A stretch of 64,000 nt of DNA from Podarcis gaigeae (Eukaryota): the NCBI GenBank assembly GCA_964106915.2, contig OZ066917.1; one strand, 5' to 3'. This document shows, one piece after another, positions 5,056 to 56,039 of this stretch. A model generated the notes under the pieces. It made no database searches, was not told the DNA's origin, and worked only from the letters and a program-made list of their open reading frames with translations. Each line of letters begins with the position of its first letter. The stretch's first letter is position 1. The position numbers were made by a program, and so were the translations under genes.

Positions 5056-6564
5056 CGGGGTGGTGGTGAATACACAAGATGCTGAATGGGATAAATGAGC
5101 AACTACTCAAGTAAATTTTAAAAATCTGCAACAAAGCCAACCATGTTAGCAACAGAGACTAACAATGCTTGTGAAGATCAGGTGAAAGCTAGGAGCTTAC
5201 CCCTTTCCCTGTTTCCCTGCCATGGGCTATAGCACATTGGCTTCAAGCACCAGATCAGCCTTTTGTCTGATTTATGCTTGTCCTCACCTACTCACCATGT
5301 GTTTAGGAGGCCCCTGACCACTCCATCCCACCATGACTGGACAGCCTTAGATGTGATGAGACCTTCAGAGCCCAAGGGTAGCCCCTAGCCCTGGTCAGCT
5401 GTGAGAGTTTGGTTGGATAGCCATCCCTTTATCACTAAGGTGCATCAGGGTGCTCACCACAAGAGTATCTGTTTAACTCTCTCGCTGAAGCGGACAGCTG
5501 TGCCAAATTCATTAGTTTGCTGAATCAGGCAAATTGCTGCAGTTTCTCCCAAGAAACACTGTAGGCAGAGGGAAAGGCACTACCAGTTGTCAACTGTGAA
5601 ATATAACCCCCAAAACTCCTACTGTGACTCTATATAGGCAACAGGCTAATCCCAATTAGGCACATTCTAGGGGTGGGAGTGAATGAGGCTACCCACAATC
5701 AATCTCCCATTGGCTGCTGTGTCTCACCAAGTGTGGCCACAGATGTACAAGTACAGACTCATTTAGACATTATATAGAGTTCCTGGAGTTTGGCACTTGT
5801 GATTGTACCATAAACACCCTTACTTATAGAGCCAGTACTATTAGTTTACAAATAAGGTTCTATTTCCAGGGATATTAAGGCTTCCCATGCATCTCCTTAA
5901 GAGATTTGCTAATTCTTATTACAGTTGGTTATTTCTAACCTCTCCACAGAACTTTAAAATACTGATGGCATACCTCTGGTTTTTTTTTGTTTTTTTAAAA
6001 TAAATCCTGTCAAGAATGGTTGTGTACAGGAGATCCATGTCAGTTTACATTTGTCACAATGCCCTGAGTCTCCTGGATAATGCTAACTTTTTTTGTTTAA
6101 GATACCAAGGAAACTCAGAACAATTTGATTATTTATGTGCACAATAACATGACCACCGGCTAGTGGTAAGTGGTAGAGGATTGTGGACAGTGAGAGAATG
6201 TGACAACCTCATCAGAGCATAGCAAAGGAAGCATGCAGGAAGGACAGTAGCTGATTGCACTGCTGGGGACATTTTTCTTGACCGCTCCTTGGGAAGCCAA
6301 GGTAGCTCTGCCCAGTTTGGAGATGATTATTCACTTCCTTTTTATCTCCTGAGATTCATTTCCTCCCATACTCTTGCATGGAGATAGATGTACCTGATCT
6401 CTCTACTCCTCTCTGGTATGGATTCAGCAGGATTTTATTTCTGTTTTTGAAAAAGACATGAATGGTAACTTTGTGAGCAGGTGTAGCATAGAAACTAAGA
6501 ACTGAGAACCAAAAAGTCATGTGACGTCAAATGCAGCTTTGCATTAAAATGTAAATGGCATCAG

Positions 6565-6568
<4 letters not shown>

Positions 6569-6625
<57 letters not shown>
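6569..6625. repeat. Compound (CT)n(GT)n microsatellite
   Basis: Read directly. Confidence 0.95.
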
Positions 6626-6627
<2 letters not shown>

Positions 6628-6741
6628 GTAAATAATGGGATCAGAGCAGGCATGGAGGGGGTGTTTAACCCTTTACCTGCCTGCTGTGGTCCTAAGGAAA
6701 ATAAGTCCCTCTTCTGATGGTGTTATTTACTTTAGGAAGAA

Positions 6742-6920
6742 GGGCTATAACTCATTGGTAGAGCATCTGCCTTGCATACAGGTGGTCCCATAGTCAGTCT
6801 TTGGCATCTTCAGGTAGCTGGGAAAGACACCTAGTCTGAAATTGTGGAGAACTACAGGCAGTCAGTGTAGTCAATACCGAGCTCTTGTCTGACTCAGTAT
6901 AAGGCAGTTTCCAGTGCCCT
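6742..6920 (+). mobile_element. Squam3-type tRNA-derived SINE
   Basis: Head gggctataactcattggtagagcatctgccttgcat, body ggcatcttcaggtagctgggaaagac, tail gactcagtataaggcagtttcc. Homologous to copies at 20411, 38784 and 52063. Confidence 0.8.
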
Positions 6921-6992
6921 GATTTAACTAACAAAATGAAATTCAGCAAACAAATGTAAATGTCTGCATTCAGGCAATTATTCAGGTGGTTG

Positions 6993-6996
<4 letters not shown>

Positions 6997-7038
<42 letters not shown>
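6997..7038. repeat. (ATT)n microsatellite, probable LINE tail
   Basis: Read directly; followed by tctatatcac, typical of an L2 3' end in reverse. Confidence 0.9.
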
Positions 7039-8531
7039 TCTATATCACTCTTCAAGGTACAAAGGGTGGAAAAGGATGAAAGGTTGAAGAAACTATGCAT
7101 GTTTAGAATAAAGGAAAGGCATAATAGTGCTCTTCAAATGCATGAAGGGCAATACAGTTATGTATGTATGTATGTTTAAAGCATGTTGTACCCCTCTCTT
7201 CAGTGTAAAGGGATCCCAGAGTGCCTTAAATGTGATCAATAAAAACAAGGCAGTCCCTGCCAGCAGGCTTACCATCTGAAAAAAACACAATACGCAACGG
7301 AAAAGGGACAGGGAGAGAAGAGGGGACAGTTCTTAGGCAGTTGTTCTTATAAGGTGGCATAGTTCAGAGGTAGGAGGTGCCTGATAGCACTGGTCTTTTG
7401 GCAAAGTTGATTGAATGAACTCTGCTTCCCTATCTTTCCCACTGAAACAGTCTGGGGAAATGACTTACCAGGGGGTCTCCTTTTTCCTTCCGATATCAGT
7501 GCTTTTAAGGAAGACCATGGAAGGATCAGAACTGGATATCTACTTTTTCTGTTTGGCGGCAGCAGCAGCATCCAGGTTCAAGAGTGATTTGGGAACCATG
7601 GCTAGCTGGGAGATGGTTCCCGAATCAAGCACTTGTTCACTGCTGCCCCTGAGTTCAGGACTAGAAGGGTAGTTTTCAGCTGAACACTTGGAGAACCTTC
7701 TTAATGTCAAGAGCAGTTTGACCATGGAACCAATGACCTGGAGAGTTGGGGCCTTTTCTTGGCTCAAGGTCTTGAAGCCTTAGCTTTGGATTTCCTGCAA
7801 AGAGGAGGGGGGTGAACTCCCTACATAGTTTACAAGACCCCCTCCATAACTTTATGATTACACAGTCCTTTGATTCTATCCTTTACATGAGAGTTAAAAT
7901 GGACTCTCACTTTTTCTTTTCTAAAAACACACAGATAGTGATAATAAATAATCGAATGACAGCAGGAACTGAGGCTTTAAGCAAATTACTACCAGAATCA
8001 CAAAATGTGCTAAGCCTCTGTAAGAAATCAATGGGATTTATTTCCAGATAATATGTTTCGAATCAGGGGGCCAGAGCCGCACAGTATTCTTCAGGGCTTT
8101 TATTATGGTATATCTTCAACCACATTTACAAGTGCAGCTTTCTCATTTGCTATTTCCCCTGGTGCAATGACTTCTAAGATGACTCCAATAGCCGTTTCTA
8201 TAATAACTATGCTATTCTATTCCATCTGTATATTGTATTTTCTGTTGAATCACCTTCCTTGTTAGAGGACCATGGACTGGATAGGGAACCAACTGATCAC
8301 CCACCAACCTGAGACATAGTCCTATGCCTAAAGCATTCCTGTCAAATCCCTCTATGGCATGGATAGGGAATCTGTGGCCCTTCGAACACTGTTGGATTAC
8401 AACTCCCACTGCCCCCATTGGCCATGGTGGCTGAAGCTGATGGGAGTTAGAGGTTAAGAACATGTGATGAACCACAGTCAAAACAGAAAATACCTTCCAG
8501 TAGCACCTTAAAGACCAACTAAGTTAGTTCT

Positions 8532-8573
8532 AGGTATGAGCTTTCGTGTGCATGCACACTTCTTCAGATACCT
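8532..8573 (-). ncRNA. Minimal type-I hammerhead ribozyme motif
   Basis: Minus strand reads AGGTAT-CTGAAGA-A-GTGTG(CATG)CACAC-GAAA-GC-TC-ATACCT: stem I 6 bp, catalytic core CUGANGA/GAAA, stem II 5 bp, palindromic AGCU stem III. Confidence 0.75.
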
Positions 8574-8586
8574 TCATATATTCTTC

Positions 8587-8628
8587 AGGTATCTGAAGAA
8601 GTGTGCATGCACATGAAAGCTCATACCT
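8587..8628 (+). ncRNA. Minimal type-I hammerhead ribozyme motif (second, inverted copy)
   Basis: AGGTAT-CTGAAGA-A-GTGTG(CATG)CACAT-GAAA-GC-TC-ATACCT. Differs from the minus-strand copy by one C>T change at the base of stem II. Confidence 0.7.
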
Positions 8629-9050
8629 AGAACTAACTTAGTTGGTCCTTAAGGTGCTACTGGAAGGTATTTTTTGTTTTGACTATGGCAGACCAACACG
8701 GCTACCTATCTGTAACTGATGAACCACAGGTTTACTACTGCAGATCTGTGACCTTCATCTGATATCTTCATTACTTGGTGACTTTCCACACTTTTGAAAC
8801 ATGTTCTTTTAATGCATGGAGAGGAAAGCCAGAATTATACCAGCTGGCTTGTCCTTGATCTCCAAATGGTTGCCATAGGCCTCTGGATGACCACCATGAG
8901 AACTGAATGCTGACCTAAATTGGTTTGATCCACCAAGTCTTTTCTTCTGTTCTTCTGTCCCATGAATAGTGTGCATGCATCGTTATAGACAAACATGTTA
9001 TCATTATAAAAATGTATGTGTAATCAGGAACCATTCATGATCAGGAGTCC

Positions 9051-9053
<3 letters not shown>

Positions 9054-9107
<54 letters not shown>

Positions 9108-9118
9108 TCACACACACA
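9054..9118. repeat. Compound (CT)n(CA)n microsatellite
   Basis: Read directly. Confidence 0.95.
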
Positions 9119-9501
9119 TACAAAGTATGTTCACAGAGCTCTGTTCACACCTTCTGCTAAACATACAGAGGTCAGAGGCAGGTTGAGCATGCACAATTCT
9201 ATCTCCCTCCCACTTTACATTTGGTGAATGTGTTTTGAAGATGTGTGAAAGGAGCAAGTGATCATTTTAATGTGTGACTGGACCCTCTGAGCTATAGCTT
9301 TCACTTCACACAAAAAAATGCCTCTCAATGCCAACTGTTCACCCATTAAGCTGGCAGCCATCAAGTGTACCTCAAAACATCAAGGATAGAGAAGCCAAGT
9401 GAAGTGCATATATGTGTGAATCAGTCCCATTTTTTGAAAACCTCATGGAATGAGACTTTATAGTCACCTTGAATAGCTTACTCCATAGAGCAATTGTTCT
9501 T

Positions 9502-9647
9502 NNNNNNNNNNNNNNNNNNNNNNNNNNNNNNNNNNNNNNNNNNNNNNNNNNNNNNNNNNNNNNNNNNNNNNNNNNNNNNNNNNNNNNNNNNNNNNNNNNN
9601 NNNNNNNNNNNNNNNNNNNNNNNNNNNNNNNNNNNNNNNNNNNNNNN
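9502..9647. other. Assembly gap (146 N)
   Basis: Run of n characters. Confidence 1.
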
Positions 9648-11689
9648 GTATTTTATCATATTATACCAGGCTTCCCTGCCTTCAGGGGTGGGAGAAGAAA
9701 AACCTGGCTCCATTTGCCAGCTAACTCCAGTTATGGGGCCAGAAGAGGGGCAGCAGTGGTGAGGGCCTTCTTTTCCCTGGAAGTGGCCTACCTGCCTGCC
9801 GCTGCAACTGCCCCTGTAAGGAGCAATATCTGTGAAGTGAAATAAAGTGAAGCACAATAAAATGAGGTGTTTTCTAATACTTCTTGCTTCTTGCCCTACC
9901 CTCAGAGGATTCAGTGAACAATCATCTTTCATGTTTCTACCTTATTAAATATCAGAAGGGTATCAGCAAACACTAGTTTCCTTTATTTCCTGGTGTGGAA
10001 TTAATCCACACTTACTTCAAACACAGAGGGATATAGAGAACAATGTTTTTGAAAGGGGCATTCTAGTCAGCTATGATTTATATAGCTTTCTGCTGCTATT
10101 TGTAAGTGAGGCTGACTCTCTAGAGTTTTCTCTGTCTTTTGCTTAAGCTCGGACCATCTCATTGTGTCCATTTACAGTACAATGGCCAAGAGTCAGGGAA
10201 AACTGAGTCTCAACACATTATTTAAATGTGGAGTATGCTGCCACCACTCCTCTGTTTGTTTCTGAGGTGATAGTCAAACAATCAAGGCACAAGTGATCCT
10301 TAACAATAACACTTTACAAAGGAAAACAGAATTAAGGGGGAATATGTGCTAAAAAATTCAGATTTTTTCTCTCGTAATAAATTAATTATCATATAACACT
10401 CAAATAGTAAATCTTTAATAAGTAGAAACCCCTACACTACATTTCAATATGAGCTCAATGTCTTTCAACACAAAGTCTTCATCAGTGGCCTGATAAAAGC
10501 ACCAGAAACCCCTAAACATAGTGAATCAATAGGCTTTGACTCATGGATATAAAACTTTAGAGGAGGAAGGCAAAACAATTACTTCCACTCTCCATTGCAA
10601 ACAGCTATCTCAATACAAGCTTTCTAGCCTACAATATAACCCACAACCTCCATATAAATTTATCTTCTTCACTCAAAGGCTCTGATGAGTATAGTTGAAA
10701 CCCTGGTATATTTATTTTTTACACATTTGTCTTACACACGCCCTGCTTATTTTTCAGGTGGAACACTAAGCAATGTAGATATGATGCCTAATCCAGAATA
10801 TTTTGTACTTCAGAAGCTATTCCAGAGTATAAAAATACATGTAAACAGCGAAGGATATGAATGCAGCACACATGTATAAATTCACATACAAGTAGACAAA
10901 CCCAAACCTTACCAGGCCACACAACCTGTGTCATCAGAAATTTTATTAAGTGTTTGACCACAACCAATTAAACTAATATTTACAATTTCCTTTACATAAA
11001 GGAAACAAACTCATTCTATAACTGAAAAAAAAAACAGAGAAAAAGAAATACACTAAACTATAATCTAAGAAAAAGTGAATAAATCTCTAAATAAAACCTG
11101 GCTATCTTTCCAGCACATGAACCATAAATGTCACTGCGATTTAGAGAAAGAATGAAGAATGGAAAAATAAGGAAAAGGGGGGGAAAGAATAATAGCATCA
11201 CAGATCGAACTCTGAAACATTCTGAACCAAAGAATACCTTTACTGATAGGTCACATTTATAACAACAGAAACTGATTACAAACTACTTCTCTTGTGTATT
11301 TTGCTGTGAAAACATGCAATTTATTCACATGCATTCAATTCATAAATTGTGCTGCTCAAGTGCAGTTTGTTCTCAGGAATGGGTGCTTGCATACAAAAAG
11401 TGATGTATGTAGTCCACACCCTAATTAGTTTCTCTTTCACACACAAATACAGCTTGGTTATCCCTCATGAGAGCTGCTTGGCATACAAATTTGTGCTTAG
11501 CTTAGTTTTCACTGTAGCTTTGCAATCCACCCTTATAAAATTAAACTCTCCTACATGAAATGTTTCCAATCAGTAAAAAGAACAGAACAAACCAACCAGC
11601 AAACAAAACCCCCAGCTGTGTCAGCAATCTCCAGCTGTAGAAATTGCAAATGTGGTATATGTGTAAATAAATGGTCACCCTCCAAAAAT

Positions 11690-12075
11690 GGTTGCACTTG
11701 GCCATTTGCTGGTTCAGCCTGCTCACTCGGCACTCCCCTGTTTATCCGATCTAATGCAATAAAATGCGTAATTAATTTCTAAATGCTTCTGTTGAGCAGT
11801 GCAATTTGTCAAGTCGAGTTGTAATAGAATTAAGCTTTTTATCAGCGATTAGCAAAAGAAGGTAAAAAAATTAATTACAGAATTGTATGCCTCCCTGCTT
11901 CAAAGCCAGGTTTGGGATTAAATGTTTGATAAAGGTTCCTTGGCACATTATAAAACATTTAGCAAAATCCGCTCTCTCCCCCCCCAACCCCAGTAATTTC
12001 TCAAAACTATCTTTGTACACATGCACAATGGGTGTAGCATAAGTAATTGAACATTTGTACAAGTTGGTTCAAATT
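11690..12075. promoter_or_regulatory. Candidate conserved non-coding element / enhancer
   Basis: Repeat-free, retained CpGs, dense TAATTA/TAATTG, GCAATAAAA and GATA-like motifs. Conservation is inferred, not measured. Confidence 0.5.
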
Positions 12076-12659
12076 GGACCCAGCCTTCTTCCACATAACT
12101 GGAACATAGCTGTTTCCCTGTATTTAAAATGTATGGACTATCTTCCTAGTAGAGTATGTATATTTCAGCCATTTTGAAAATAGCTGTGCCACCAGTTGTA
12201 TATTGCTTTTCTGTGAGGAAAGATCCACACTTAAAATGGAAGATAAATGTAAGCTAACATGCTAGTTAGATGCTGAAAATGCAACTCCTAGTCTGCGTAA
12301 GATGAAACAGCTTTCATGCGAAAGAGAAATAACTTCAGATGTCACACTTAAGGGTCATACTGGTTCACTGGAAAATTACCAAAACTTTGGGCAAAATTGA
12401 TAGTATATTTGTGCTTATGAAATGGGGCAAGAAGGAAAAAAACAAGCCAAGACAAAGGCATTGGTGTCAGAGACAAGACTGAACATCAACAGACTGGAAA
12501 AACTTACATCTAAAGGGGAAATTAGCAATGATTATATACTGCTTACTGAAACTAAGCATCTACAGGTGTTTACAAAAGACTTCACAAAAATGAACTGGTA
12601 GGTGTCACTAAGCTCACAAAATTAGTTTGGGTTATTTAGCTAAACTCCTTATTCCATAA

Positions 12660-13041
12660 TAGGGAAGGCTGTGGAAGAAATTAAGTTTTGTTCACATTTT
12701 AATCTAACACACTACTTCCAAAAGCAACGTGTGCAGCTATCCTTGGAAATTTGCACTTTCCTGAATTTTGCAATGCAGTTCTACACAACCACACCAAATA
12801 TGTTTATTACAAGAAAATGTGCATTGAAATCCATATATTGGGGAAAATAGCATACAAAAATGCACATTGCTTGCAAAAATATGTATATATACAAAACTGC
12901 ATGTAAAAACATATATATTAGAAGAAAAGTGCTGATAAAATTTTGTTAGTGCTTTTAAAAATAATCACAAACTGATGCAAAATGTGGTGAACTGAATTTA
13001 AGGTTAGACAAATGAGAAACTGGCAGATTTGTCCATGCCTG
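12660..13041 (-). mobile_element. AT-rich hAT (TAGGGATG-terminus) MITE, decayed
   Basis: Reverse-complement similarity to 54360-54755 and 23656-23994 (gaatctgtca/tggcagattt end, tgcat-rich body). Confidence 0.55.
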
Positions 13042-14584
13042 TTATTAGGTGAATTCAATTTTCCAACCTGCTTCCCAGATTTGTTTGAGGACACCATACC
13101 CAGGCAACATGTCCACTTAGTCCATTTCCCCCCAGTTCTGCTACACTACCACTGAATGCTCTTGCTTAATACCTAACACCCTCACTAACCAGAGAAGAAA
13201 TGGCAATCCCAACAGTCTGCTCCATCACTCCACAGTGCAGAGTGTTACCATAACATCGTTGGTGAGCTTCCATTTGGATTCACGTGTGTGTTGGCCAAAC
13301 CAATGAGATGCAATATTGGTAAATTCTTCTTTTTTCCTCTGACCATTGCCTTACCCATTTGATGAGCGTGACACTGTAACATGAGCCTATACTTCACAGA
13401 TACCAGCTATGACAGTTTTGCGATCTCCTCTCTTAGTTATATTTTTGAACTTCAACGAGAATGGAAGTTAGTATGACTGAGAACTGTGAGCTGCTCGCTC
13501 ACACACATCATGCTGCTTATGCATGGCGACCACTCACCTAAATAAAAAAAGTGGCTCAAAGTAATTTGTGGACTTGCTCCAAGAATTTCCAGAATATTGA
13601 TTGTACCCCACATTTGTTGTTAATGACTATCCTACAAGCGGGGAAAGAAAGGATGAAAGTACAGCACTCCTTAATCAAAGACTGCTTATCCTATTAGCAA
13701 GATGAAAGTACATAGGTTATCATACATTTATTAGAAGGATACCTGGAGGAAGTTGCTCTAGATCATTGTTCTTTACGGGAGGAAGAAACACTAATGAGAA
13801 TTGCTCATGGGAATCGATTGCCTAATAGAGGCTCTCTCCTGAAGCTTCATCTCCACTCTACTGCACTGCCATGCTAAGGAGGATAGCAGAACAAATCTAA
13901 CAGGGCAATCAGTGGTTTATTTAGTTCTGAAGATTACACTAGCAATATTAACTGCAGCAGCCTAATACTAGGTAAGACCTAGTATTTTAGCACTAACAAC
14001 AGTAAGAATAATATTTAATAATTACACTTCCAATAGATACCAACATCTTTTATTTGTTCATGACCCAGCAACAGCAAAGCACAGCTTGTTGCATTTAAAC
14101 ACATACTTTAAGCCTTTCTCAGTGAAATCAGTGGGATGCATAAAGGAGTTTGGTCCTTGGATTTTGTCCATTTGAAGCACAGTCCTATGCATGCTACTCT
14201 GAAGAAGAACCTGAAGAAGAAATTAGTATGAAGGTATTCATGCTGATGTAGTAATAACAGTAATAATAGCAGCAGCAGCAGCAGCAAAATGTTATGTTCA
14301 GATCAGCCCATCCCAGAATACCTCTTACCTTTGCAGTGGGCAGCTTTGCAGGACAGAGCCAGCCCGCATCCACAACAGCTGGGGAATTGCAACCACAGGG
14401 AGATGCTCCTGGCTCTCCCTCTGGTTAGATAGTTTTGAATTCAGCCTGCCTGCCAGATTGGGCCAATGACTCACTCTGGGCTCACTCTGGAGGGTGGGCC
14501 TGACAGGGTCCAAAGAGGACTCTACCCAAGTCCACCCCCAGGGGATAAAAATGGGCCCTGCCTCACACCTGGCACCGCACTACC

Positions 14585-14589
<5 letters not shown>

Positions 14590-14616
<27 letters not shown>

Positions 14617-14725
14617 ATCTATGCCACACACATCTGGCTGGGTTTCCCCAGCCACTCTGGGTGGCTTCCAACAAATAGAAAAACATAATAAAATGTCAAA
14701 CATTAAAAACTTCCTGATACAGCCT
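14590..14725 (-). mobile_element. L2 LINE 3' end with (GAT)n tail
   Basis: catctggctgggtttccccagccactctgggtggcttccaac, a lacertid L2 3' terminal stem-loop motif, preceded by (GAT)n. Confidence 0.7.
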
Positions 14726-14797
14726 TCATGTTGTTGTGCTTGTTCTTACCTGCTCCAGGGGTAGCTTGGATAATTTGCCCTGTAGCCTAGCCAAATT

Positions 14798-14890
14798 ATA
14801 ATTATTTTATTATTTATATCCCTCTGATTTGACTGGGTCACCCCAGCCACTCAGGGTGGCTTCCAACAAAATATTAAAACACAAAAAACC
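14798..14890 (-). mobile_element. Second L2 3' end
   Basis: gactgggtcaccccagccactcagggtggcttccaac, homologous to the 14590 copy. Confidence 0.65.
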
Positions 14891-15599
14891 TCATAATCAC
14901 TTCTGCTTTCCTCCTACGGCTCAGCAATCTGACTGTTCCCATCCCTTTCATACAACTGTTGCCCCTTGGTGTGGCTTCTTCTTACCCTTCAGCTAATGCT
15001 GTCTGCAGTGATAGCTCCATCTCTGCAGGTTTTCTGATTGTGGACACTTCCCTGTCATCCCTGTTTTCTTCAGCGCAGATCAACAACATGTCTGAGCTAA
15101 AGCAATACCGAATTTAATTCCCAAAGGTGTGTTCCCGCTGCCCAAGTCTACTGGCCCATTCTGAAGATGGCAACGGCATTGAAGAACTCCAATCACTAAA
15201 ACATCCAGATGGAAACCAAATCAAATCCTAAAAACTGTATCAGCAGTTGCTTAACTGTAACCATGGTACAGTTGTGCACGCAACGCACATTGCTGCAAGA
15301 TGTTCAGGCATTCTGCTCATGAGTAAAATCTACATGCAAAGAGGAAGAACTTTCCTAACATTCCAAAACTTGTGAGCATGTTTAGTCCTCATTGGGCAAT
15401 ACTGTGCATTTGGTTTTCCCCAGGGATGCTGCTATCTCTCTGTTGTTTCACGTGATCCTAGTTTTGGCTCTAGTTTTTGTCAGCACTTGCCATGCGAGTT
15501 CAGATACAAAGGTGGACCTGCTTGTAACTCTGAATATACAAATGATCACATATTTTGCCTAAGCATAACTAATATGTACAGGTATTAAAATATAGTCAA

Positions 15600-15970
15600 C
15601 AAAATTGCATCATTTTTCTCATAGAGTTTTTTCCATCACACTTTTGTCTAATGCTCAGGCTAAATGGTTCCCTAAGATGCTATGTCCTCTCCTTTGAACC
15701 ACCCTGGAAAATCGCTCTTTCCTTGCTGATTACATCCTTCAAACACATCTAGGTAGTTATAATTCATGTCCCGTCTTAAGTTACCATTTAGCCAACCTAG
15801 ACATATTTAGTTCCTTTAATCTTCTTCCCTAATAAGTCAATCCCTTGAGCCCTTTAATCATCCTTGTTGCTGTTCTCTCAATTCCCTCCAATTCATCTAC
15901 ATCTGTCCACTGTGAAGGTACCCAGAAGGAAAAACAGTATTATAACTCTAGTTTTGCTAAAGCTGCCTAG
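15600..15970 (-). mobile_element. Old CR1 LINE ORF2 3' fragment
   Basis: ttagccaacctagacatatttagttcctttaatcttcttccc...ccctttaatcatccttgttgct is reverse CR1 ORF2 C-terminal coding pattern (MI.GL...EERLKEL.M.SL.K). Confidence 0.6.
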
Positions 15971-16199
15971 TGATATATGCTTCTCCTCTGACATGAGCTT
16001 TTGCTGAGTCTCCACCTGACAACCTTGCTACTGGAATCCACTGGTGAACTTGTGTGATTCTCACATTACAACAGTTTTATCGTACAGCAAATGTGCTCAG
16101 GGGAATTGTTCTTCAGGTGGGCAGTTGTAAAGACTTTTGGGCACTTGCAACTAAATGCTGGGACAGCCATTTAAGGCATCCAGTCAGTAAAATTGATAA

Positions 16200-16480
16200 T
16201 GCTCCCTCAGAAATTTGGGATGGAGGTGGCCTGGGAGAGGGCATTCTCTGTGACAGCCCCCAAGTTGTAAAACTTTCTCCTCACAGAGGTGCACCTTCAC
16301 ATTTCAGTTTGCAGCAAATGCTAAAGACACACCTCTTTACGCTGGCCTTTGCCACCTGACATGCATGTTTTTAAGGCCCACCCTATTTCTGTGACTATAA
16401 TTTGTTTAAAAGTGTTTTTAATATTAGGTTTTGAATTGTTGTTGCCCGCCATTTGGGAGAAGGATGGTTAATAAATCAAT
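16200..16480 (+). mobile_element. L2 LINE 3' fragment
   Basis: gagagggcattctctgtgacagcccc (RAFSV.AP) and QQMLKTHLFTLAF stop, then an AT-rich 3' UTR and aataaatcaat tail. Confidence 0.7.
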
Positions 16481-16704
16481 GGCATGGAGAAGGAAGGTTG
16501 TGTTTAAATATCCCCAGTCAGTCACTACAGTGACCAGTGACCAGTTCTGCCTCCCACATAGTTGTGTATATTTCACCATGAATTTATATGTACCGTATTT
16601 AACAGTCATCTGACTTACACATGTGCATGACCTAGTTCTTTCTTTTCTGCCTCCTTTTCTGTTCAGGTTGGAATATCTGTGCAAAGTGTACAATGGAAAA
16701 GTTA

Positions 16705-16946
16705 CAGTGGTACCTCGGGTTACAGACACTTCAGGTTACAAATGCTTCAGGTTACAGACTCCGCTAACCCAGAAATAGTATCTCAGGTTAAGAACTTTGC
16801 TACAGGATGAGATCAGAAATCGCATGGTGGTGGCACTGTGGCAGCGGGAGGCCCCATTAGCTAAAGTGGTACCTCAGGTTAAGAACAGTTTCAGGTTAAG
16901 AATGGACCTCCGGAACGAATTAAGTTCTTAACCCGAGGTACCACTG
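16705..16946 (+). mobile_element. Tc1/mariner (Tigger-like) MITE
   Basis: TIRs CAGTGGTACCTCGGGTTA...TAACCCGAGGTACCACTG with TA on both sides. Confidence 0.93.
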
Positions 16947-17024
16947 TACTTTATAAAAACGAATGTAGGACAGTATTACCGGGTCACTTTAGGCCTTCTT
17001 CAGAAAACGTGAAACCTCTGTAAT

Positions 17025-17164
17025 GGGATAGCTCAGTTGGTAGAACATGTGGCTCTTAATCTCAGGGTCATGGGTTGAAGCCCCACAAAGGAAAAACAAA
17101 AACAAATCCTGCATTGCAGGGGGTTGGACTAGATGACCCTCATGGTCCCTTCTGATTCTATGAT
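17025..17164 (+). mobile_element. tRNA-Lys(CTT)-derived SINE with CR1-like 3' tail
   Basis: tagctcagttggtagaacatgtggctcttaatctcagggtcatgggttgaagcccca matches tRNA-Lys-CTT. Followed by gcagggggttggactagatgaccctc...gattctatgat. Confidence 0.85.
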
Positions 17165-18413
17165 AGGTGTCACACAAAGCAAGGACAAGAAGTGTTTGGA
17201 AGGCCCTTCTGGTTTTATTTGTGTTTCCCATAATAGAAAACTAGCTTTTGTGTTTTCTGTAATTACAAAATCTCCTTCACAATTTCTATATTGTGGCTGT
17301 GTCCCTGAAAAATCAGTGAAACGCTCTCTTGAGTTCTGATTCACAAAGGATCATTTGGGACAAGTTATAGCATATGCTCTTGAAAATCTGAAAGCAAAGT
17401 AATCACAGGTTTATTCCCCCCCCAGCCCCCAAATGCTAATCTCTGAGTGAACTGCGAGCTGTTGTAGTGCGTAAGAACAGAAGGAACTGTATAAACAACT
17501 TGGGCCATGGTGGTGATATGTATTTTTGGGTTGAAGATGAAACAAATTTTGTAAGACATATACAGATCAGTAGGCAAAAGTAAGCACAGAGGAGCAGAAA
17601 TTAAGAGTCACATGTTTGTAGGAATGGAGTTACAACTGTAGTCTGGGCAATGCCATTTCATGAACCTCTGAATTACCAAACGACCAGAAGACTGATAAGC
17701 ACATGCTGCCAATTACCTTTATGATGCTTTCACATGCAATTACCCAATGATTATCATCCCTTGAAACTCTTGGCATTCAGAGTTCAATTAAGAGACTTTT
17801 TACCTCAATCTGGATTTTGACAATTTTCACCCAAGAATTAATTTTGATGTAAAAATATGCCACCAGCATTCAAATGTCATCGCATTTGAAACTTGCGCAG
17901 GTTTTTATTTCAGTCCTAATGCTCTTTCTTTGCTGACAGAACATCATCCTCTGGACCAGTGCATTGAAAGCCCAAGTAACCTTTTATTCCTACACCTTTG
18001 TAGTTGGTCATGTATGTCAATGCAGAGTTCAACATTTCATGGATCATGCATAACATTTACTGAGCCTGTTTGCATAGTAAGTAGATTCTCCAGCAAGGGA
18101 GCTGACAGTGTATTTCTGTCATTAGGATTTATTAAATTGGTTATACAGGGGAGCAGTTCCACCATGAAATGGATATTCATATATGCAATGTATGCAGCCT
18201 TTTTGAAACTACTATTATTTCTAATTGAAATGAGAATATAATATAATATTGTTGGGACAAACTGATTAATTTTTTGACCACTCCTATTTTTTAAAGAGTT
18301 TTAGGTCATGAGAAACAGTCACCTGGGTTGCCTGCTTTCAGATCTTGGTGTGCTCTTTAGATATCTATGTGCTTTTGCAATACTGCTTGTACCAGTCACT
18401 AAAACTGGGAATA

Positions 18414-18654
18414 CAGTGGTACCTCGGGTTACAGATGCTTCAGGTTACATACGCTTCAGGTTACAGACTCCGCTAACCCAGAAATAGTACCTCGGGTTAA
18501 GAACTTTGCTTCAGGATGAGAACAGAAACCGCACGGCGGTGGTATAGTGGCAGCGGGAGGCCCCATTAGCTAAAGTAGTGCTTCAGATTAAAACAGTTTC
18601 AGGTTAAGAATGGACCTCCGGAACGAATTAAGTTCTTAACCCGAGGTACCACTG
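18414..18654 (+). mobile_element. Tc1/mariner (Tigger-like) MITE, second copy
   Basis: Same TIRs and TA TSD; highly similar to 16705-16946. Confidence 0.93.
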
Positions 18655-18726
18655 TACAGTGAGGAACGGTAACAGGATAGCAGAGTAGTTTTCCTCCCTG
18701 CTGTAGTTTCATGAATATGGAGCAAA

Positions 18727-18910
18727 CCAGAGTCATGTGGTGGTTAGTGTTGGATTAAGACTAGGGAGACCCACATTAAAATCCCTTCTGAGACTTTGAG
18801 GTGGGTCAGTCACTGTCTCTTGTCTAACCTCCCTGACAGGATGCATGTGAAGATAAAATGGTGATGGTGGTGAAGACCCATGTCACCTTGTGACTTGAGG
18901 AGGAAGGGGC
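18727..18910 (+). mobile_element. MIR/CORE-like SINE
   Basis: gtggtggttagtgttggattaagactagggagaccc...gtctaacctccctgacagg...gaagataaaatgg. Confidence 0.6.
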
Positions 18911-20410
18911 TGATGGAAATCATAATCCCAAAACTCTGGAGAGCACCAGGTTGAGGACTTGATGGTAAAACTCTTTCTTTGATAGTATTGAAGAGCTTGG
19001 AGTTTTGTTGAGTGCTTCCAGGCTTGAGGTAGAGTAGAATCACCAGTATCTCTTTCTCTTCTCTTTGCACATCCTTCCTTTCTTGAATCTACTGGCTAAT
19101 CTGATCTGTTTCCATGATTTTGTGTTGAATAAAACTTTGACCACTGACACCCCTAACTAAAACAAGTATAGGCTGTCAATACCTAACATAAAACTGTTTA
19201 CACTTGTCATGGGCACACCTGCTTAGAAAAACAAGGATGGTGGTGGGAAATGTGTTGTAGACTCAACTTAATTTTGAGGTCAGAATAATTAGCACAGCTC
19301 AGTGCATCATGGAATTCATCCATTAATTATTCTCTCTATTTCTCTATCTATTATGAAACTTACAAAGGTAGGAAAGCTTAGGAAATCTGATGTTGACATG
19401 AAAGAATGAAATGGGCCAGATTTGTTTGAGGCACACATTTAATGATTTATAGAAATCCTTGGCAAATGGACAATTTCCCCCTGGGCTTTAAGGTGCTTTC
19501 TGAAAGGAGTCTCCCAGGGCTGCCATCTGTGTCTTCATATCCAAAACAGAGCATTTGCCCACAGCATTTTAAGGCTCCTCTTGGCTTGATTTCCTGATCA
19601 GTAATTGGGGAGCTATTAAATGGAAACAGTTTTGAACAGATTTAAGGGAAGTGGTGGTTGCCGAGTTCATTAGGAAATTGCATTTGATTTTATATCCTAA
19701 CAAACTTGCATCTGCCTCTTCCACCATATTGTAACTCTTCAAATCCACACATGTGCCAAGGATGTGCAGGGCTGACAGAATCACCATCTGTTTCCCAGTC
19801 TCAATGATCTGCACACTGTAGAGTCATAACACAATAATTTGATAACAGGTTTACACTGTGTGACCACCATTGCCTTGCTTGGAATGCTTTCACCTTTTCA
19901 CCTTTTGTGGGTGGCTTCCCTATCTGCTGCTGCAGGCCAGAGATGTTGCACAGGGAGTGATTTTTAATATGGAGAAATTTTCAAATATGCAAGTCCTGGT
20001 TTGCATTTTGAAGCACAATAGTCCACCATGCTTTTAGTTTATTTATATTTATTTTTGCAATGGCTTTTCACCTAGTTGAATTGATAAACTGGTTTTGATT
20101 AGGGTATAAATATAGGAAAATATAACAGGGAGCTTGCACCTGAAAATGTAGGGTTAGAGGAAATTGGCTGTAATTATCTCTTTTGTTTAATGTATTGCAT
20201 TATACCTGGTTTTATCTCTTTTAATTGTAACCAACTTTAGAATTGCGTTTAGAATGAAAATCAGGCAAGAAATGCTTTAAATAAATGAAACTGTCCATGG
20301 AACATAATATTTACTGAACATCTGGCTAGGTTATTGGCCTGTGCTCTACTTTGCCAGCTTATTCTTCTTTTAGGGATCAAGTTGCAGGACAAATGCAGGT
20401 TGCACCATCT

Positions 20411-43696: not shown

Positions 43697-44248
43697 CAGG
43701 GGCGCCGACTTATAAAAAATATTGGGGGGGCCCATACCGGGGTCCTTGCCACAAGATCCTGGCTGCGGGGCGCAATTCGGGAGGGCTCGGCTGGCCGGGC
43801 CCAGGCCCGCGGGGCTCCTCCGTGCTCCCCTCCCCCGGCCAGGCGGCGCCTGCAAAGGCTGCAGGTTCCGTTGCACCTCCGTCTCTCTTTCCACTGGTAG
43901 CGAGAGCGGGTGGGAGGAGGCCACCCGGGAGCCGGAACCGGGCACCAAATAAGGAGAGCGGGGCGGGCCTGGATCCTGGCCTTGTTTGGCGCTTCCCCTC
44001 GGCCGGCGGCCCAGCCAAACCCGTGGCGGCGGCGAGGCGATGCCCGCGCAGGGGGGCGCCCACCTCTCGGCCCCCGCCCGGCGCTGCCGCCCCAGCACCT
44101 GCCCGCTCCTCCCAAGGGGCCTCCTCTCCCTCCCGCCTCTTCGCAGCAGTAATATAATTTTCTTAAATTATTGGGGGGGGCGGAGCCCCCCAAACGAATT
44201 TTTGAGGGGGCTCGGGCCCCCTCAGGCCCCATGGAGTCGGCGCCTATG
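43697..44248. mobile_element. Young GC-rich non-autonomous hAT element
   Basis: TIRs CAGGGGCGCCGACT / AGTCGGCGCCTATG. Perfect 8-bp TSD tatatgtt at 43689-43696 and 44249-44256. Confidence 0.92.
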
Positions 44249-54755: not shown

Positions 54756-55019
54756 TTTGGTAGTGAAATTTGTATTAGCAAAATGCCACGAGTAAAAGTT
54801 AACTAGCGCCCTACATAACAGTCTCACTGTTCAAATCAAGTTTAGAACTCTCTGTGCCTGTTAGGAATGATGTGTATTTACAAAAGGACAATCCAATCAC
54901 ATATCCCATGTTTGGTTTCAGTAACCATGGTAAGTGGTTTATCTGCTGTATCTTCTTGCAAATTGAACCAGTAATGTTGGAGTCAAAATATGATGATAAA
55001 TATGGATCAGACTCAACAG

Positions 55020-55151
55020 CAGGGGTCACCAGAATGATGCATCCTCACAGAGTGTTGCACTACAACTCTCATGACCATTGGCCATGCCAGCTAAGGCTGA
55101 TAGAAATTGAAATCCAGCAACATCTGGACGGCACTACATTGGCTCCCCTTG
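55020..55151. mobile_element. Short palindromic hAT MITE (old)
   Basis: caggggtcaccaga...cactacaactctcat...gcaacatctggacggcactacattggctccccttg. Confidence 0.65.
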
Positions 55152-55158
55152 CTCTAGA

Positions 55159-55296
55159 TAGCTGTTCTCAACCTGTGGGTCCCCAGATATTGTTGGACTT
55201 CAACTCCCATCATCCCTGAGCTCTGGCCTTGCTAGCTAGGGATGATGGGAGTTGTAGTCCAACAACATCTGGGGACCCACAGGTTGAGAACCGCTG
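55159..55296. mobile_element. Short near-perfect palindromic hAT MITE (young)
   Basis: ttctcaacctgtgggtccccagatattgttggacttcaactcccatcatccct is mirrored by agggatgatgggagttgtagtccaacaacatctggggacccacaggttgagaa; flanked by ctctaga(g). Confidence 0.9.
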
Positions 55297-55304
55297 CTCT
55301 AGAG

Positions 55305-55558
55305 CATGGATAGGCAAACTAAGGCCCGGGGGCCGGATCCGGACCAATCACCTTCTAAATTCAGCACGTGGACGGTCTGGGAATCAGCGTGTTTTTACAT
55401 GAGTAGAATGTGTGCTTTTATTTAAAATACATCTCTGGGTTATTTGTGGGGCGTAGGAATTTGTTCATTATTCCCCCCCCCCCAAATATAGTAAGGCTCC
55501 CCACAAGGTCTGAGGGACAGTGAACCAACCCCCTGCTGAAAAAGTTTGCTGACCCCTG
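55305..55558 (-). mobile_element. hAT MITE, same family as 4391-4636
   Basis: catggataggcaaact...agtttgctgacccctg; TSD ctctagag/ctctagaa. Confidence 0.9.
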
Positions 55559-56039
55559 CTCTAGAAGTAAAACTAAGAAAGTAGTCAGTTTTTGTGTTTC
55601 TTATTTATTTTGCTATTACCCCAGCGTCTCTGTGCCCTGACTTAGAAACTCACCAGGCAGGTCTGATATGTGCCTCCATATTTAAACATTATATAGGGAT
55701 ATGTCACCTGGGTGGGAAAATGCATTTACTGAAAAACAAAGGAAGGAGCAGCAGAAGTAGGAATGAAATATATGGCCTGGGTTCCAAGATCACTGAACAC
55801 ATACACACACACACACCCTAGTAAATGTGTGGGCTGTGCAACCACACATAGCACCACAGATATCAGGGGTGGCTGTGCATACACATCTACACTGAAGAAA
55901 GAATGAGTAAGCACACAGTCATCTATTCTGTGTGTGAGTGCCTGGGGCAACATTGCATAGGCCACGCTGACATACCACTGGCCATACAGCCTGGTAAATC
56001 TTCTTTCCCAACTGTGTAGGATCCACTTGGTTTGTCCAC

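What the first reader, a model, noticed from the sequence alone, without database searches (positions are those of the whole stretch)
8476..8684. Back-to-back hammerhead ribozyme pair in a Penelope-derived hairpin
Seen: two 42-nt motifs (8532-8573 minus, 8587-8628 plus) fold as type-I hammerheads with stem I AGGUAU/AUACCU, core CUGAAGA plus one extra A, stem II GUGUG-CAUG-CACAC, GAAA, and a vestigial palindromic AGCU stem III. Predicted cleavage is after CUC (8622 on plus, 8538 on minus). Known: Penelope-like elements carry minimal hammerheads thought to cleave as dimers through palindromic stem III. Inference: with inverted copies, a transcript from either strand carries one ribozyme plus its antisense. 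It could self-cleave co-transcriptionally or collapse into a ~98-bp dsRNA stem with a 13-nt loop that locks the ribozyme off, making a possible strand-independent RNA switch in a host intron.
Basis: partly seen in the sequence, partly recalled or inferred. Interest (0 to 1): 0.8.

Follow-up and report, generated by a model that had tools for sequence, protein, structure and literature searches.

The report
Back-to-back Penelope retroelement fragment with hammerheads
This is a recent 239-base insertion of a very common lizard "jumping gene" fragment, pasted in as two mirror-image copies that each carry a tiny self-cutting RNA motif; it is real but ordinary, and nothing supports the proposed RNA switch.

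Summary
Two 42-nt minimal type-I hammerhead motifs lie at 8532-8573 (minus) and 8587-8628 (plus). They sit inside a 102-nt inverted repeat that is 96% complementary, with a 13-nt spacer.

It is not a chance match. A strict descriptor finds it once in the window and never in 300 simulated windows.

What it is: a 239-bp insertion (8478-8716) flanked by a perfect 13-bp target-site duplication. It consists of two head-to-head, 5'-truncated copies of one Penelope-like/retrozyme family. A 34-nt "tail" is present at one end only. This is the published Penelope insertion layout in miniature.

Contigs from two related species run straight across an empty site, so the insertion is young and not conserved. 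The family is highly repeated in four related species.

The plus copy has already lost C11.1 by CpG decay.

On either strand the antisense copy is transcribed first. Forcing the ribozyme fold costs about 63 kcal/mol, and minimal hammerheads of this type are reported inactive as monomers. The "strand-independent RNA switch" is therefore unsupported.

The scan has noted many similar palindromic hammerhead inserts elsewhere in this genome. The "host intron" claim could not be tested, and no raw RNA reads were available.

The parts
8465..8477 (.). Left copy of the 13-bp target-site duplication TGATGAACCACAG
   Evidence: An identical 13-mer lies at 8717-8729. Related species have a single copy at the empty site. 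Its last 6 nt, CCACAG, match the next element bases (CCATAG on this strand) at 5 of 6 positions. This is possible priming microhomology.
8478..8573 (-). Inverted, 5'-truncated element copy without tail (96 nt); holds the minus-strand hammerhead
   Evidence: It is the reverse complement of 8587-8682 with 3 mismatches. It shares the minority family variants of the other arm at 8532 and 8492.
8532..8573 (-). Minimal type-I hammerhead motif, complete core (C3-A9, extra A, G10.1-C11.1, GAAA, AGCU, C17). Predicted cut after 8538.
   Evidence: It is the only hit to the strict descriptor.
8574..8586 (+). 13-nt spacer (loop) TCATATATTCTTC; probably a few more 5' bases of the plus copy
   Evidence: It resembles the family's upstream consensus (..TTTCAG-) seen as loose ends. 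That comparison was by eye only. UUCUUCAG (8581-8588) also pairs with CUGAAGAA of the core.
8587..8628 (+). Minimal type-I hammerhead motif with C11.1 changed to U (8614, CpG to TpG). Predicted cut after 8622.
8587..8682 (+). Direct-orientation element copy, the part mirrored by the left arm
8683..8716 (+). 34-nt 3' 'tail', present on the plus copy only
   Evidence: The family's 3' end lies at 8716/8717: loose ends behind 8717 are AT-rich with low agreement. The length matches the 30-40 bp Penelope tail (PMC8557442, PMC3846280) and the ~34-nt tail of Anolis PAc (PMC11167929).
8717..8729 (.). Right copy of the 13-bp target-site duplication

Best explanation
The locus is a young insertion, specific to this lineage, of a short Penelope-like-element (PLE) or non-LTR-retrozyme family.

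One RNA of that family was reverse-transcribed into a staggered break in the chromosome. This gave two head-to-head, 5'-truncated copies.
- The plus copy runs from about 8574 to 8716 and ends with the 34-nt tail.
- The inverted copy (8478-8573) stops 34 nt earlier on the template.
- A 13-bp target-site duplication flanks the whole.

The hammerhead motifs are passengers. They belong to the family's terminal repeat, where they are thought to act as dimers in tandem transcripts, helped by the element's protein.

At this locus they are almost certainly silent. Each transcript has one sense copy, and that copy is zipped to a perfectly matched antisense copy made just before it.

Shown here: the anatomy, the duplication, the empty site in relatives, the family's abundance, the variants shared by both arms, and the folding energetics.

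Inferred: how the inverted arm arose. Either both target strands were primed at the two reverse-transcription start sites, or one cDNA folded back or jumped templates.
For: - 13/13 identical direct repeat flanking 8478-8716.
- Empty site in relatives. Contigs of organism B (X4 record 24) and organism G (X14 record 9) pass directly from 8463 to 8716 with adjoining record coordinates.
- Filled site in this species. Contigs of organism A cross both junctions with 0 differences: 8350-8516 and 8692-8850.
- Family abundance. 6,000-20,000 contigs per DNA run lie on the element. Summed depth is 1e5-1e6 against about 10-100 on the flanks.
- Both arms share minority family variants. At 8532/8628 about 90% of family depth in organism A reads the other base. 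At 8668, about 99% of family depth reads the other base; this copy's base there is mirrored at 8492, though 8492 itself was not listed as variable. This points to one source RNA.
- The tail is 34 nt. The cut-site-to-end distances are 60 and 94 nt. In Anolis PAc the two RT start sites lie about 55 and 89 nt past the cut site, and the protein cleaves and extends both target strands (PMC11167929).
- Published layout: an adjacent inverted 5'-truncated copy, a tail at one end only, and a TSD (PMC8557442; PMC3846280).
- Motif features match the metazoan PLE min-HHR definition (PMC4209133).
- Folding.
Against: - No family consensus or autonomous parent with reverse-transcriptase and endonuclease domains could be retrieved. 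Assignment to PLEs rests on the motif and the insertion architecture, not on a linked ORF.
- There is no sequence similarity, by eye, to the published Anolis Poseidon_Ac terminal region.
- The 34-nt offset may be coincidence. The left junction shows a 5/6 microhomology (CCACAG vs CCATAG) that could by itself have set where the inverted arm ends.
- All runs were contigs, so no RNA ends, strand or expression data exist for this locus.
- No listed contig spans the palindrome centre.
Confidence: 0.85

Rival explanations
1. One reading: the inverted pair is a strand-independent RNA switch. It would either self-cleave co-transcriptionally or lock into a dsRNA stem that keeps the ribozyme off.
For: Both motifs have near-complete cores. 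The 42-nt pieces alone fold into the stem I and stem II shape. The long hairpin is very stable at -181 kcal/mol.
Against: - The antisense is transcribed first on both strands. The minimum-energy fold of growing transcripts pairs the ribozyme to it from about 14 nt on.
- Forcing the hammerhead fold costs +62.9 kcal/mol.
- There is one sense copy per transcript, but the motif needs a partner for helix III. Monomers are inactive and dimers only weakly active in vitro (PMC4209133).
- No RNA-seq ends were found at the cut site, even for the active Anolis element (PMC11167929).
- The insert is absent in two relatives.
- There is CpG decay at C11.1 in the plus copy.
Confidence: 0.02
2. By-product role: if the locus is transcribed, the ~100-bp near-perfect hairpin is diced or edited. 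It would then yield small RNAs against the same retroelement family, as a hairpin-RNA source.
For: The stem is near-perfect over 96-102 bp. Generic microRNA-hairpin models score it below their thresholds. Small RNAs that switch polarity across inverted Penelope halves were reported in a rotifer (PMC3846280).
Against: There is no evidence that this locus is transcribed. No small-RNA data exist. The insert is not conserved. It is one of many such inserts.
Confidence: 0.08
3. Assembly artefact: a fold-back chimera made the palindrome, and only a single 5'-truncated copy exists in the genome.
For: No listed contig spans the centre. PLE inverted structures are known to trouble assemblies (PMC8557442).
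Against: - Contigs of organism A cross both outer junctions exactly. The left junction joins flank to the antisense arm and the right joins tail to flank. This requires both orientations at one site.
- Some contig depth covers 8577-8580 in the spacer (table 3).
- The arms differ at 3 internal positions, which a fold-back read artefact would not give.
- A second study of the same species holds 0.83 of the words.
Confidence: 0.03

Closest known systems
Minimal hammerhead ribozymes of metazoan Penelope-like elements (Cervera & de la Pena 2014, PMC4209133; dimer cleavage by Lunse et al. 2017 as cited in PMC6765202)
   Same: - CUGANGA and GAAA boxes.
- One extra nucleotide between A9 and G10.1.
- G10.1-C11.1 pair (minus copy).
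- No helix III of its own, only a palindromic 4-nt AGCU.
- H17 = C, type-I topology, and very high copy number.
- The paper already reports pairs of min-HHRs on opposite strands 100-700 bp apart, and motifs in reptiles.
   Different: Helix II is 5 bp with a CAUG loop (a 14-nt perfect palindrome), not 7-8 bp. The two motifs here are only 13 nt apart. No linked RT/EN ORF was seen.
Canonical PLE insertion architecture (Arkhipova 2013 PMC3846280; Craig et al. 2021 PMC8557442)
   Same: 5'-truncated copy with an adjacent inverted 5'-truncated copy, head-to-head. A 30-40 bp tail at one end only. Short TSD (8-10 bp there, 13 bp here).
   Different: Miniature version: both copies are cut down to about 100-140 nt of the terminal repeat, with no ORF.
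Poseidon_Ac (PAc) of Anolis carolinensis (Frangieh et al. 2024, PMC11167929)
   Same: - Same motif architecture: CUGAGGA-U-helix II-GAAA-CGUC there, CUGAAGA-A-helix II-GAAA-GCUC here.
- Two RT start sites about 34 nt apart define the tail.
- Both target strands are cleaved and extended.
- The HHR is protein-assisted and dispensable for insertion in vitro.
   Different: No obvious sequence similarity to the Repbase consensus (compared by eye only). In PAc the ORF starts in helix II. Here the ATG in loop II meets a stop after 7 codons.
Animal non-LTR retrozymes (Cervera & de la Pena 2020 PMC7229834; Li et al. 2026 preprint 10.64898/2026.07.22.740005)
   Same: Short non-autonomous units with type-I hammerheads, derived from PLE terminal repeats. 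The mean reptile consensus is 176 bp. Monomer derivatives are scattered in genomes.
   Different: Retrozymes are defined by tandem head-to-tail copies that can give circular RNA. This locus is head-to-head and cannot excise a unit.

Membership tests
Metazoan PLE minimal hammerhead (min-HHR) | Catalytic boxes C3-U4-G5-A6-N7-G8-A9 and G12-A13-A14 | tested here: met
   CUGAAGA and GAAA are present in both copies. No family variant at >=10% lies in CUGAAGA. G12>A occurs at 10-15% through CpG decay.
Metazoan PLE minimal hammerhead (min-HHR) | [quoted passage not shown] | tested here: met
   An extra A lies at 8600 (+) and 8560 (-). The feature is listed in PMC4209133.
Metazoan PLE minimal hammerhead (min-HHR) | G10.1-C11.1 base pair closing helix II | tested here: met
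   Met in the minus copy. The plus copy has G-U after a CpG-to-TpG change at 8614.
Metazoan PLE minimal hammerhead (min-HHR) | Palindromic 15.2-16.2 (minimal helix III able to pair between two copies), then H17 | tested here: met
   A15.1-G-C-U16.1 is self-complementary and is followed by C17. The common family variant C17>U is still H. The nearest-neighbour cofold did not itself form this 4-bp helix.
Metazoan PLE minimal hammerhead (min-HHR) | Self-cleavage as a dimer | not testable with these tools
   Needs in vitro transcription of tandem constructs. Only contigs were available, so no RNA ends could be read.
Metazoan PLE minimal hammerhead (min-HHR) | Location in the terminal repeat (pLTR) of an element encoding RT plus GIY-YIG endonuclease | tested here: inconclusive
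There is no ORF in the insert and no other family copy in the window. No copies were found in the searchable collections.
PLE insertion architecture | Inverted 5'-truncated copy adjacent to a direct copy, 30-40 bp tail at one end, TSD | tested here: met
   compared with PMC8557442 and PMC3846280.
Rfam Hammerhead_1 (RF00163) and other Rfam hammerhead models | Score at or above the gathering threshold | tested here: not met
   No hammerhead hit even at E<=10. These models expect a helix III, so this does not argue against the min-HHR class.
Non-LTR retrozyme | Head-to-tail tandem of two or more units, each with a hammerhead, able to release a unit-length RNA | tested here: not met
   The two motifs are on opposite strands, head-to-head.

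The most novel reading that the evidence does not exclude
The two arms were copied from one RNA. One arm ends at the tail-less reverse-transcription start site and the other at the tail-including start site, exactly 34 nt apart.

If head-to-head mini-inserts across this genome show the same offset as a rule, they would be natural footprints of a symmetric two-strand priming step by a dimeric Penelope RNP. So far that step has been seen only in vitro for Anolis PAc.
Probability: 0.2. Interest if true: 0.45.

Novelty: new member of a known kind. Interest (0 to 1): 0.15.

Why it matters
On its own it matters little. It is one more copy of a class described in 2014, in a layout described since 2005-2013.

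Its modest value is as a clean, dated example:
- Relatives have an empty site, the TSD is perfect, and both arms share family variants.
- One arm carries the 34-nt tail and the other lacks it.
- This agrees with the 2024 in vitro finding of two reverse-transcription start sites and priming on both target strands.

A genome-wide census of such mini-palindromes could test that integration model in vivo.

Tried and rejected
- Rfam, whole window at gathering score and 8400-8800 at E<=10: no hammerhead model matched, only generic microRNA-hairpin models below threshold. The microRNA reading was rejected, because any long perfect hairpin scores on those models.
- More family copies in the window: pattern searches, blastn and nhmmer found none. 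The 12-17 nt GTGTGCATGCA-like matches at 8968-8986 and 9184-9200 lack the catalytic boxes.
- Family copies in public collections: two metagenome scans and one viral scan found none. No family alignment, covariation test or covariance model could therefore be made.
- RNA evidence: every run offered was kept as contigs, and the 'RNA?' run is from another species. It covers only the repeat, not the flanks. There is therefore no information on expression or cleavage at this locus.
- Dimer modelling: cofold gives a swapped stem I/stem II duplex (-42.4 kcal/mol), not the helix-III dimer. Nearest-neighbour energies cannot judge the hammerhead core, so this says nothing either way.
- Selection on the motif: variable family sites number 3 in the 42-nt motif and 6 in the next 60 nt. 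That is no clear difference, and the family is too young to show constraint.
- Gene context: the ten longest ORFs had no Pfam match, so 'host intron' stays untested.
The comparison was by eye only.
- The Lunse et al. 2017 paper is not held and is cited only through PMC6765202.

Full report
**1. Observation**

The repeat finder gives inverted arms 8472-8573 and 8587-8688. They are 102 nt long and 96% complementary, with 13 nt between them.

Each arm contains the 42-nt string AGGUAU-CUGAAGA-A-GUGUG-CAUG-CACAC-GAAA-GCUC-AUACCU.
- The minus copy (8532-8573) is exact.
- The plus copy (8587-8628) has U for C at 8614.
- In standard hammerhead numbering this reads C3-A9, one extra A, G10.1...C11.1, G12-A14, A15.1-G-C-U16.1, C17.
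- The predicted cuts fall after 8622 (+) and 8538 (-), as stated.

The motif is not chance.
- The 30-nt core has 0 expected matches.
- A script encoding the published min-HHR descriptor found only this locus in the window. The descriptor requires stem I of at least 4 bp, CUGANGA, 0-1 extra nt, a G...C helix II, GAAA, a palindromic ANNU, and H17.
- The same script found nothing in 300 Markov-simulated 64-kb sequences.

Rfam has no hammerhead match at any threshold tried. Its models expect a helix III, which this class lacks.

**2. What the locus is**

A perfect 13-bp direct repeat, TGATGAACCACAG, lies at 8465-8477 and 8717-8729. It brackets a 239-bp insert (8478-8716), which has three parts:
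- an inverted copy, 8478-8573;
- a 13-nt spacer, 8574-8586;
- a direct copy, 8587-8716.

The last 34 nt of the direct copy (8683-8716) have no counterpart in the inverted copy.

Contigs of public runs laid on 8350-8850 give the decisive test.
- In two related species (coded B and G) a single contig runs from 8463 straight on to 8716 with adjoining record coordinates. Exactly the insert plus one repeat copy is missing.
- In the window's own species (A), contigs cross both outer junctions without a difference.

The insertion is therefore real, its boundaries are right, and it is younger than the split from these relatives. Their flanks differ from the window by only about 1-2% (table 8).

The same call shows that the element is highly repeated. 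Between 6,000 and 20,000 contigs per DNA run lie on it. Summed depth is 1e5-1e6 against about 10-100 on the flanks. This is not a copy number.

The family's 3' end lies at 8716/8717, beyond which the contigs run on into unrelated AT-rich sequence.

No other copy is in the window, and none was found in the metagenome or viral collections.

**3. Fit to known Penelope-like elements**

Cervera and de la Pena (PMC4209133) define the metazoan PLE min-HHR by these features:
- the catalytic boxes;
- the G10.1-C11.1 pair;
- a palindromic 15.2-16.2 with no helix III of its own.

All four are met here, with the plus copy degraded at 11.1.

That paper reports single motifs with no detectable cleavage and weak cleavage of dimers. 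It also reports min-HHRs in reptiles, and pairs of motifs on opposite strands 100-700 bp apart.

Craig et al. (PMC8557442) and Arkhipova et al. (PMC3846280) describe the standard PLE insertion. It has strong 5' truncation and often an adjacent inverted 5'-truncated copy, head-to-head. A 30-40 bp 'tail' is present at one end only, and a short TSD flanks the whole. This locus is that layout in miniature.

Frangieh et al. (PMC11167929) studied the Anolis element PAc and reported four things.
- Reverse transcription starts at two internal sites about 34 nt apart, which defines the tail.
- The protein cleaves and extends both target strands.
- The hammerhead cleaves only with protein and is not needed for insertion in vitro.
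- No RNA-seq reads begin or end at the cut site.

Here the two arms end 60 and 94 nt past their cut sites, a difference of 34 nt. In PAc the start sites lie about 55 and 89 nt past the cut.

The PAc hammerhead, read from the Repbase consensus, has the same architecture but a different sequence.

**4. One template for both arms**

At 8532/8628, about 90% of family depth in species A reads the other base. At 8668, about 99% reads the other base. This copy's base at 8668 is mirrored at 8492 in the other arm, although 8492 itself was not listed as variable. Both arms thus carry the same minority state at two mirrored positions.

The arms therefore derive from one RNA, or one arm was copied from the other.

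The three internal arm differences are 8614, 8648 and 8674. At 8614 and 8648 the left arm seems to keep the family state: no variant at >=10% is listed at the mirrored positions 8546 and 8512. The change at 8614 is CpG to TpG. These look like decay after insertion, or reverse-transcriptase errors.

How the inverted arm arose is inferred, not shown. Two routes are possible:
- Two-strand priming at the two start sites, followed by a template jump.
- Self-priming or fold-back, as proposed for rotifer Penelope (PMC3846280).

The left junction has a 5/6 microhomology, CCACAG in the target against CCATAG in the element. That could by itself have fixed where the inverted arm ends, so the 34-nt match to the tail may be coincidence.

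Family contigs stop matching this copy at 8571 and 8589. Their upstream consensus..TTTCAGT|GTATCTG, suggests two things. The spacer is a diverged stretch of the plus copy's 5' side. The 6-bp stem I seen here belongs to this subfamily or copy, since the common form pairs only GUAU/AUAC. This comparison was by eye.

**5. Does it work as a switch?**

The geometry is head-to-head, so on either strand the antisense copy is transcribed before the sense ribozyme.
- In minimum-energy folds of growing transcripts of both strands, the ribozyme bases pair with the antisense copy once about 14 nt are out (13 of 14, then 24 of 24).
- Forcing stems I and II of the plus hammerhead inside the full insert costs +62.9 kcal/mol.
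- The whole hairpin folds at -181 kcal/mol, while the isolated motifs fold at -10 to -12 kcal/mol.
- Each transcript has a single sense copy, but the motif needs a second copy to build helix III.
- Upstream UUCUUCAG can also pair with CUGAAGAA of the core.

Two further points weigh against it. The insert is absent in relatives, and C11.1 in the plus copy has decayed. I find no support for a conserved or functional switch.

A by-product role as a source of hairpin-derived small RNAs remains possible if the locus is transcribed. That was not testable here, because all runs offered were contigs and the one guessed RNA run is from another species and covers only the repeat.

**6. Limits**

- 'Host intron' is untested. 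The ten longest ORFs of the window have no Pfam match.
- No family alignment could be built, so there is no covariation test. Common variants number 3 in the 42-nt motif and 6 in the next 60 nt, which is no clear sign of constraint in so young a family.
- Cofold does not reproduce the helix-III dimer, but nearest-neighbour models cannot judge that.
- No listed contig spans the palindrome centre. Some depth does cover 8577-8580, and both outer junctions are confirmed.
- The species is coded. Earlier notes of the scan call the genome a lizard, and I did not verify that.

**7. Earlier notes of the scan**

Searches by words found 72 notes on hammerhead plus Penelope in this genome. Several are palindromic back-to-back inserts of 220-285 bp. 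Three follow-ups judged such loci ordinary members of the known class. My own tests agree. These notes are not independent evidence.

**8. Verdict**

The feature is real and correctly recognised as Penelope-derived. It is an ordinary young insertion of a known kind, and its layout makes the proposed ribozyme activity at this locus very unlikely.

Interest is 0.15. The only lead worth a census is the 34-nt tail asymmetry between arms copied from one RNA.

Noticed in passing
window 8354-8460: High-copy palindromic MITE-like repeat (..TTGGATTACAACTCCCA...TGGGAGTT..). Contig depth at 8418-8451 is hundreds of times that of the unique flanks in all three DNA runs. The Penelope insert landed at its right edge.
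   Followed up: partly
window 8581-8600: UUCUUCAG-GUAU-CUGAAGAA is an 8-bp hairpin that would hide the CUGAAGA catalytic box of the plus copy even without the antisense arm. The family's upstream consensus has a 5-bp version (UUCAG/CUGAA). This may be a built-in alternative fold of the family.
   Followed up: partly
window 8601-8614 and 8546-8559: Helix II plus its loop (GUGUGCAUGCACAC) is a perfect 14-nt palindrome. Two RNAs could therefore also pair through helix II. Cofold prefers this swapped dimer (-42.4 kcal/mol).
   Followed up: partly
window 8968-8986 and 9184-9200: Short GTGTGCATGCA-like matches to helix II (12-17 nt). They lack the catalytic boxes and look like chance matches.
   Followed up: yes
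window 9066-9125: (CT)n followed by (CA)n microsatellite.
   Followed up: no
   Followed up: no
window 8272-8288 and 8354-8370: 17-nt direct repeat ATGGAC/CATGGATAGGGAA, 82 nt apart at 88% identity, just left of the MITE-like repeat. Its origin was not examined.
   Followed up: no
window 43697-44248 and 55012-55566: Earlier first-stage notes on this window report hAT-type MITEs there. These were not examined here.
   Followed up: no
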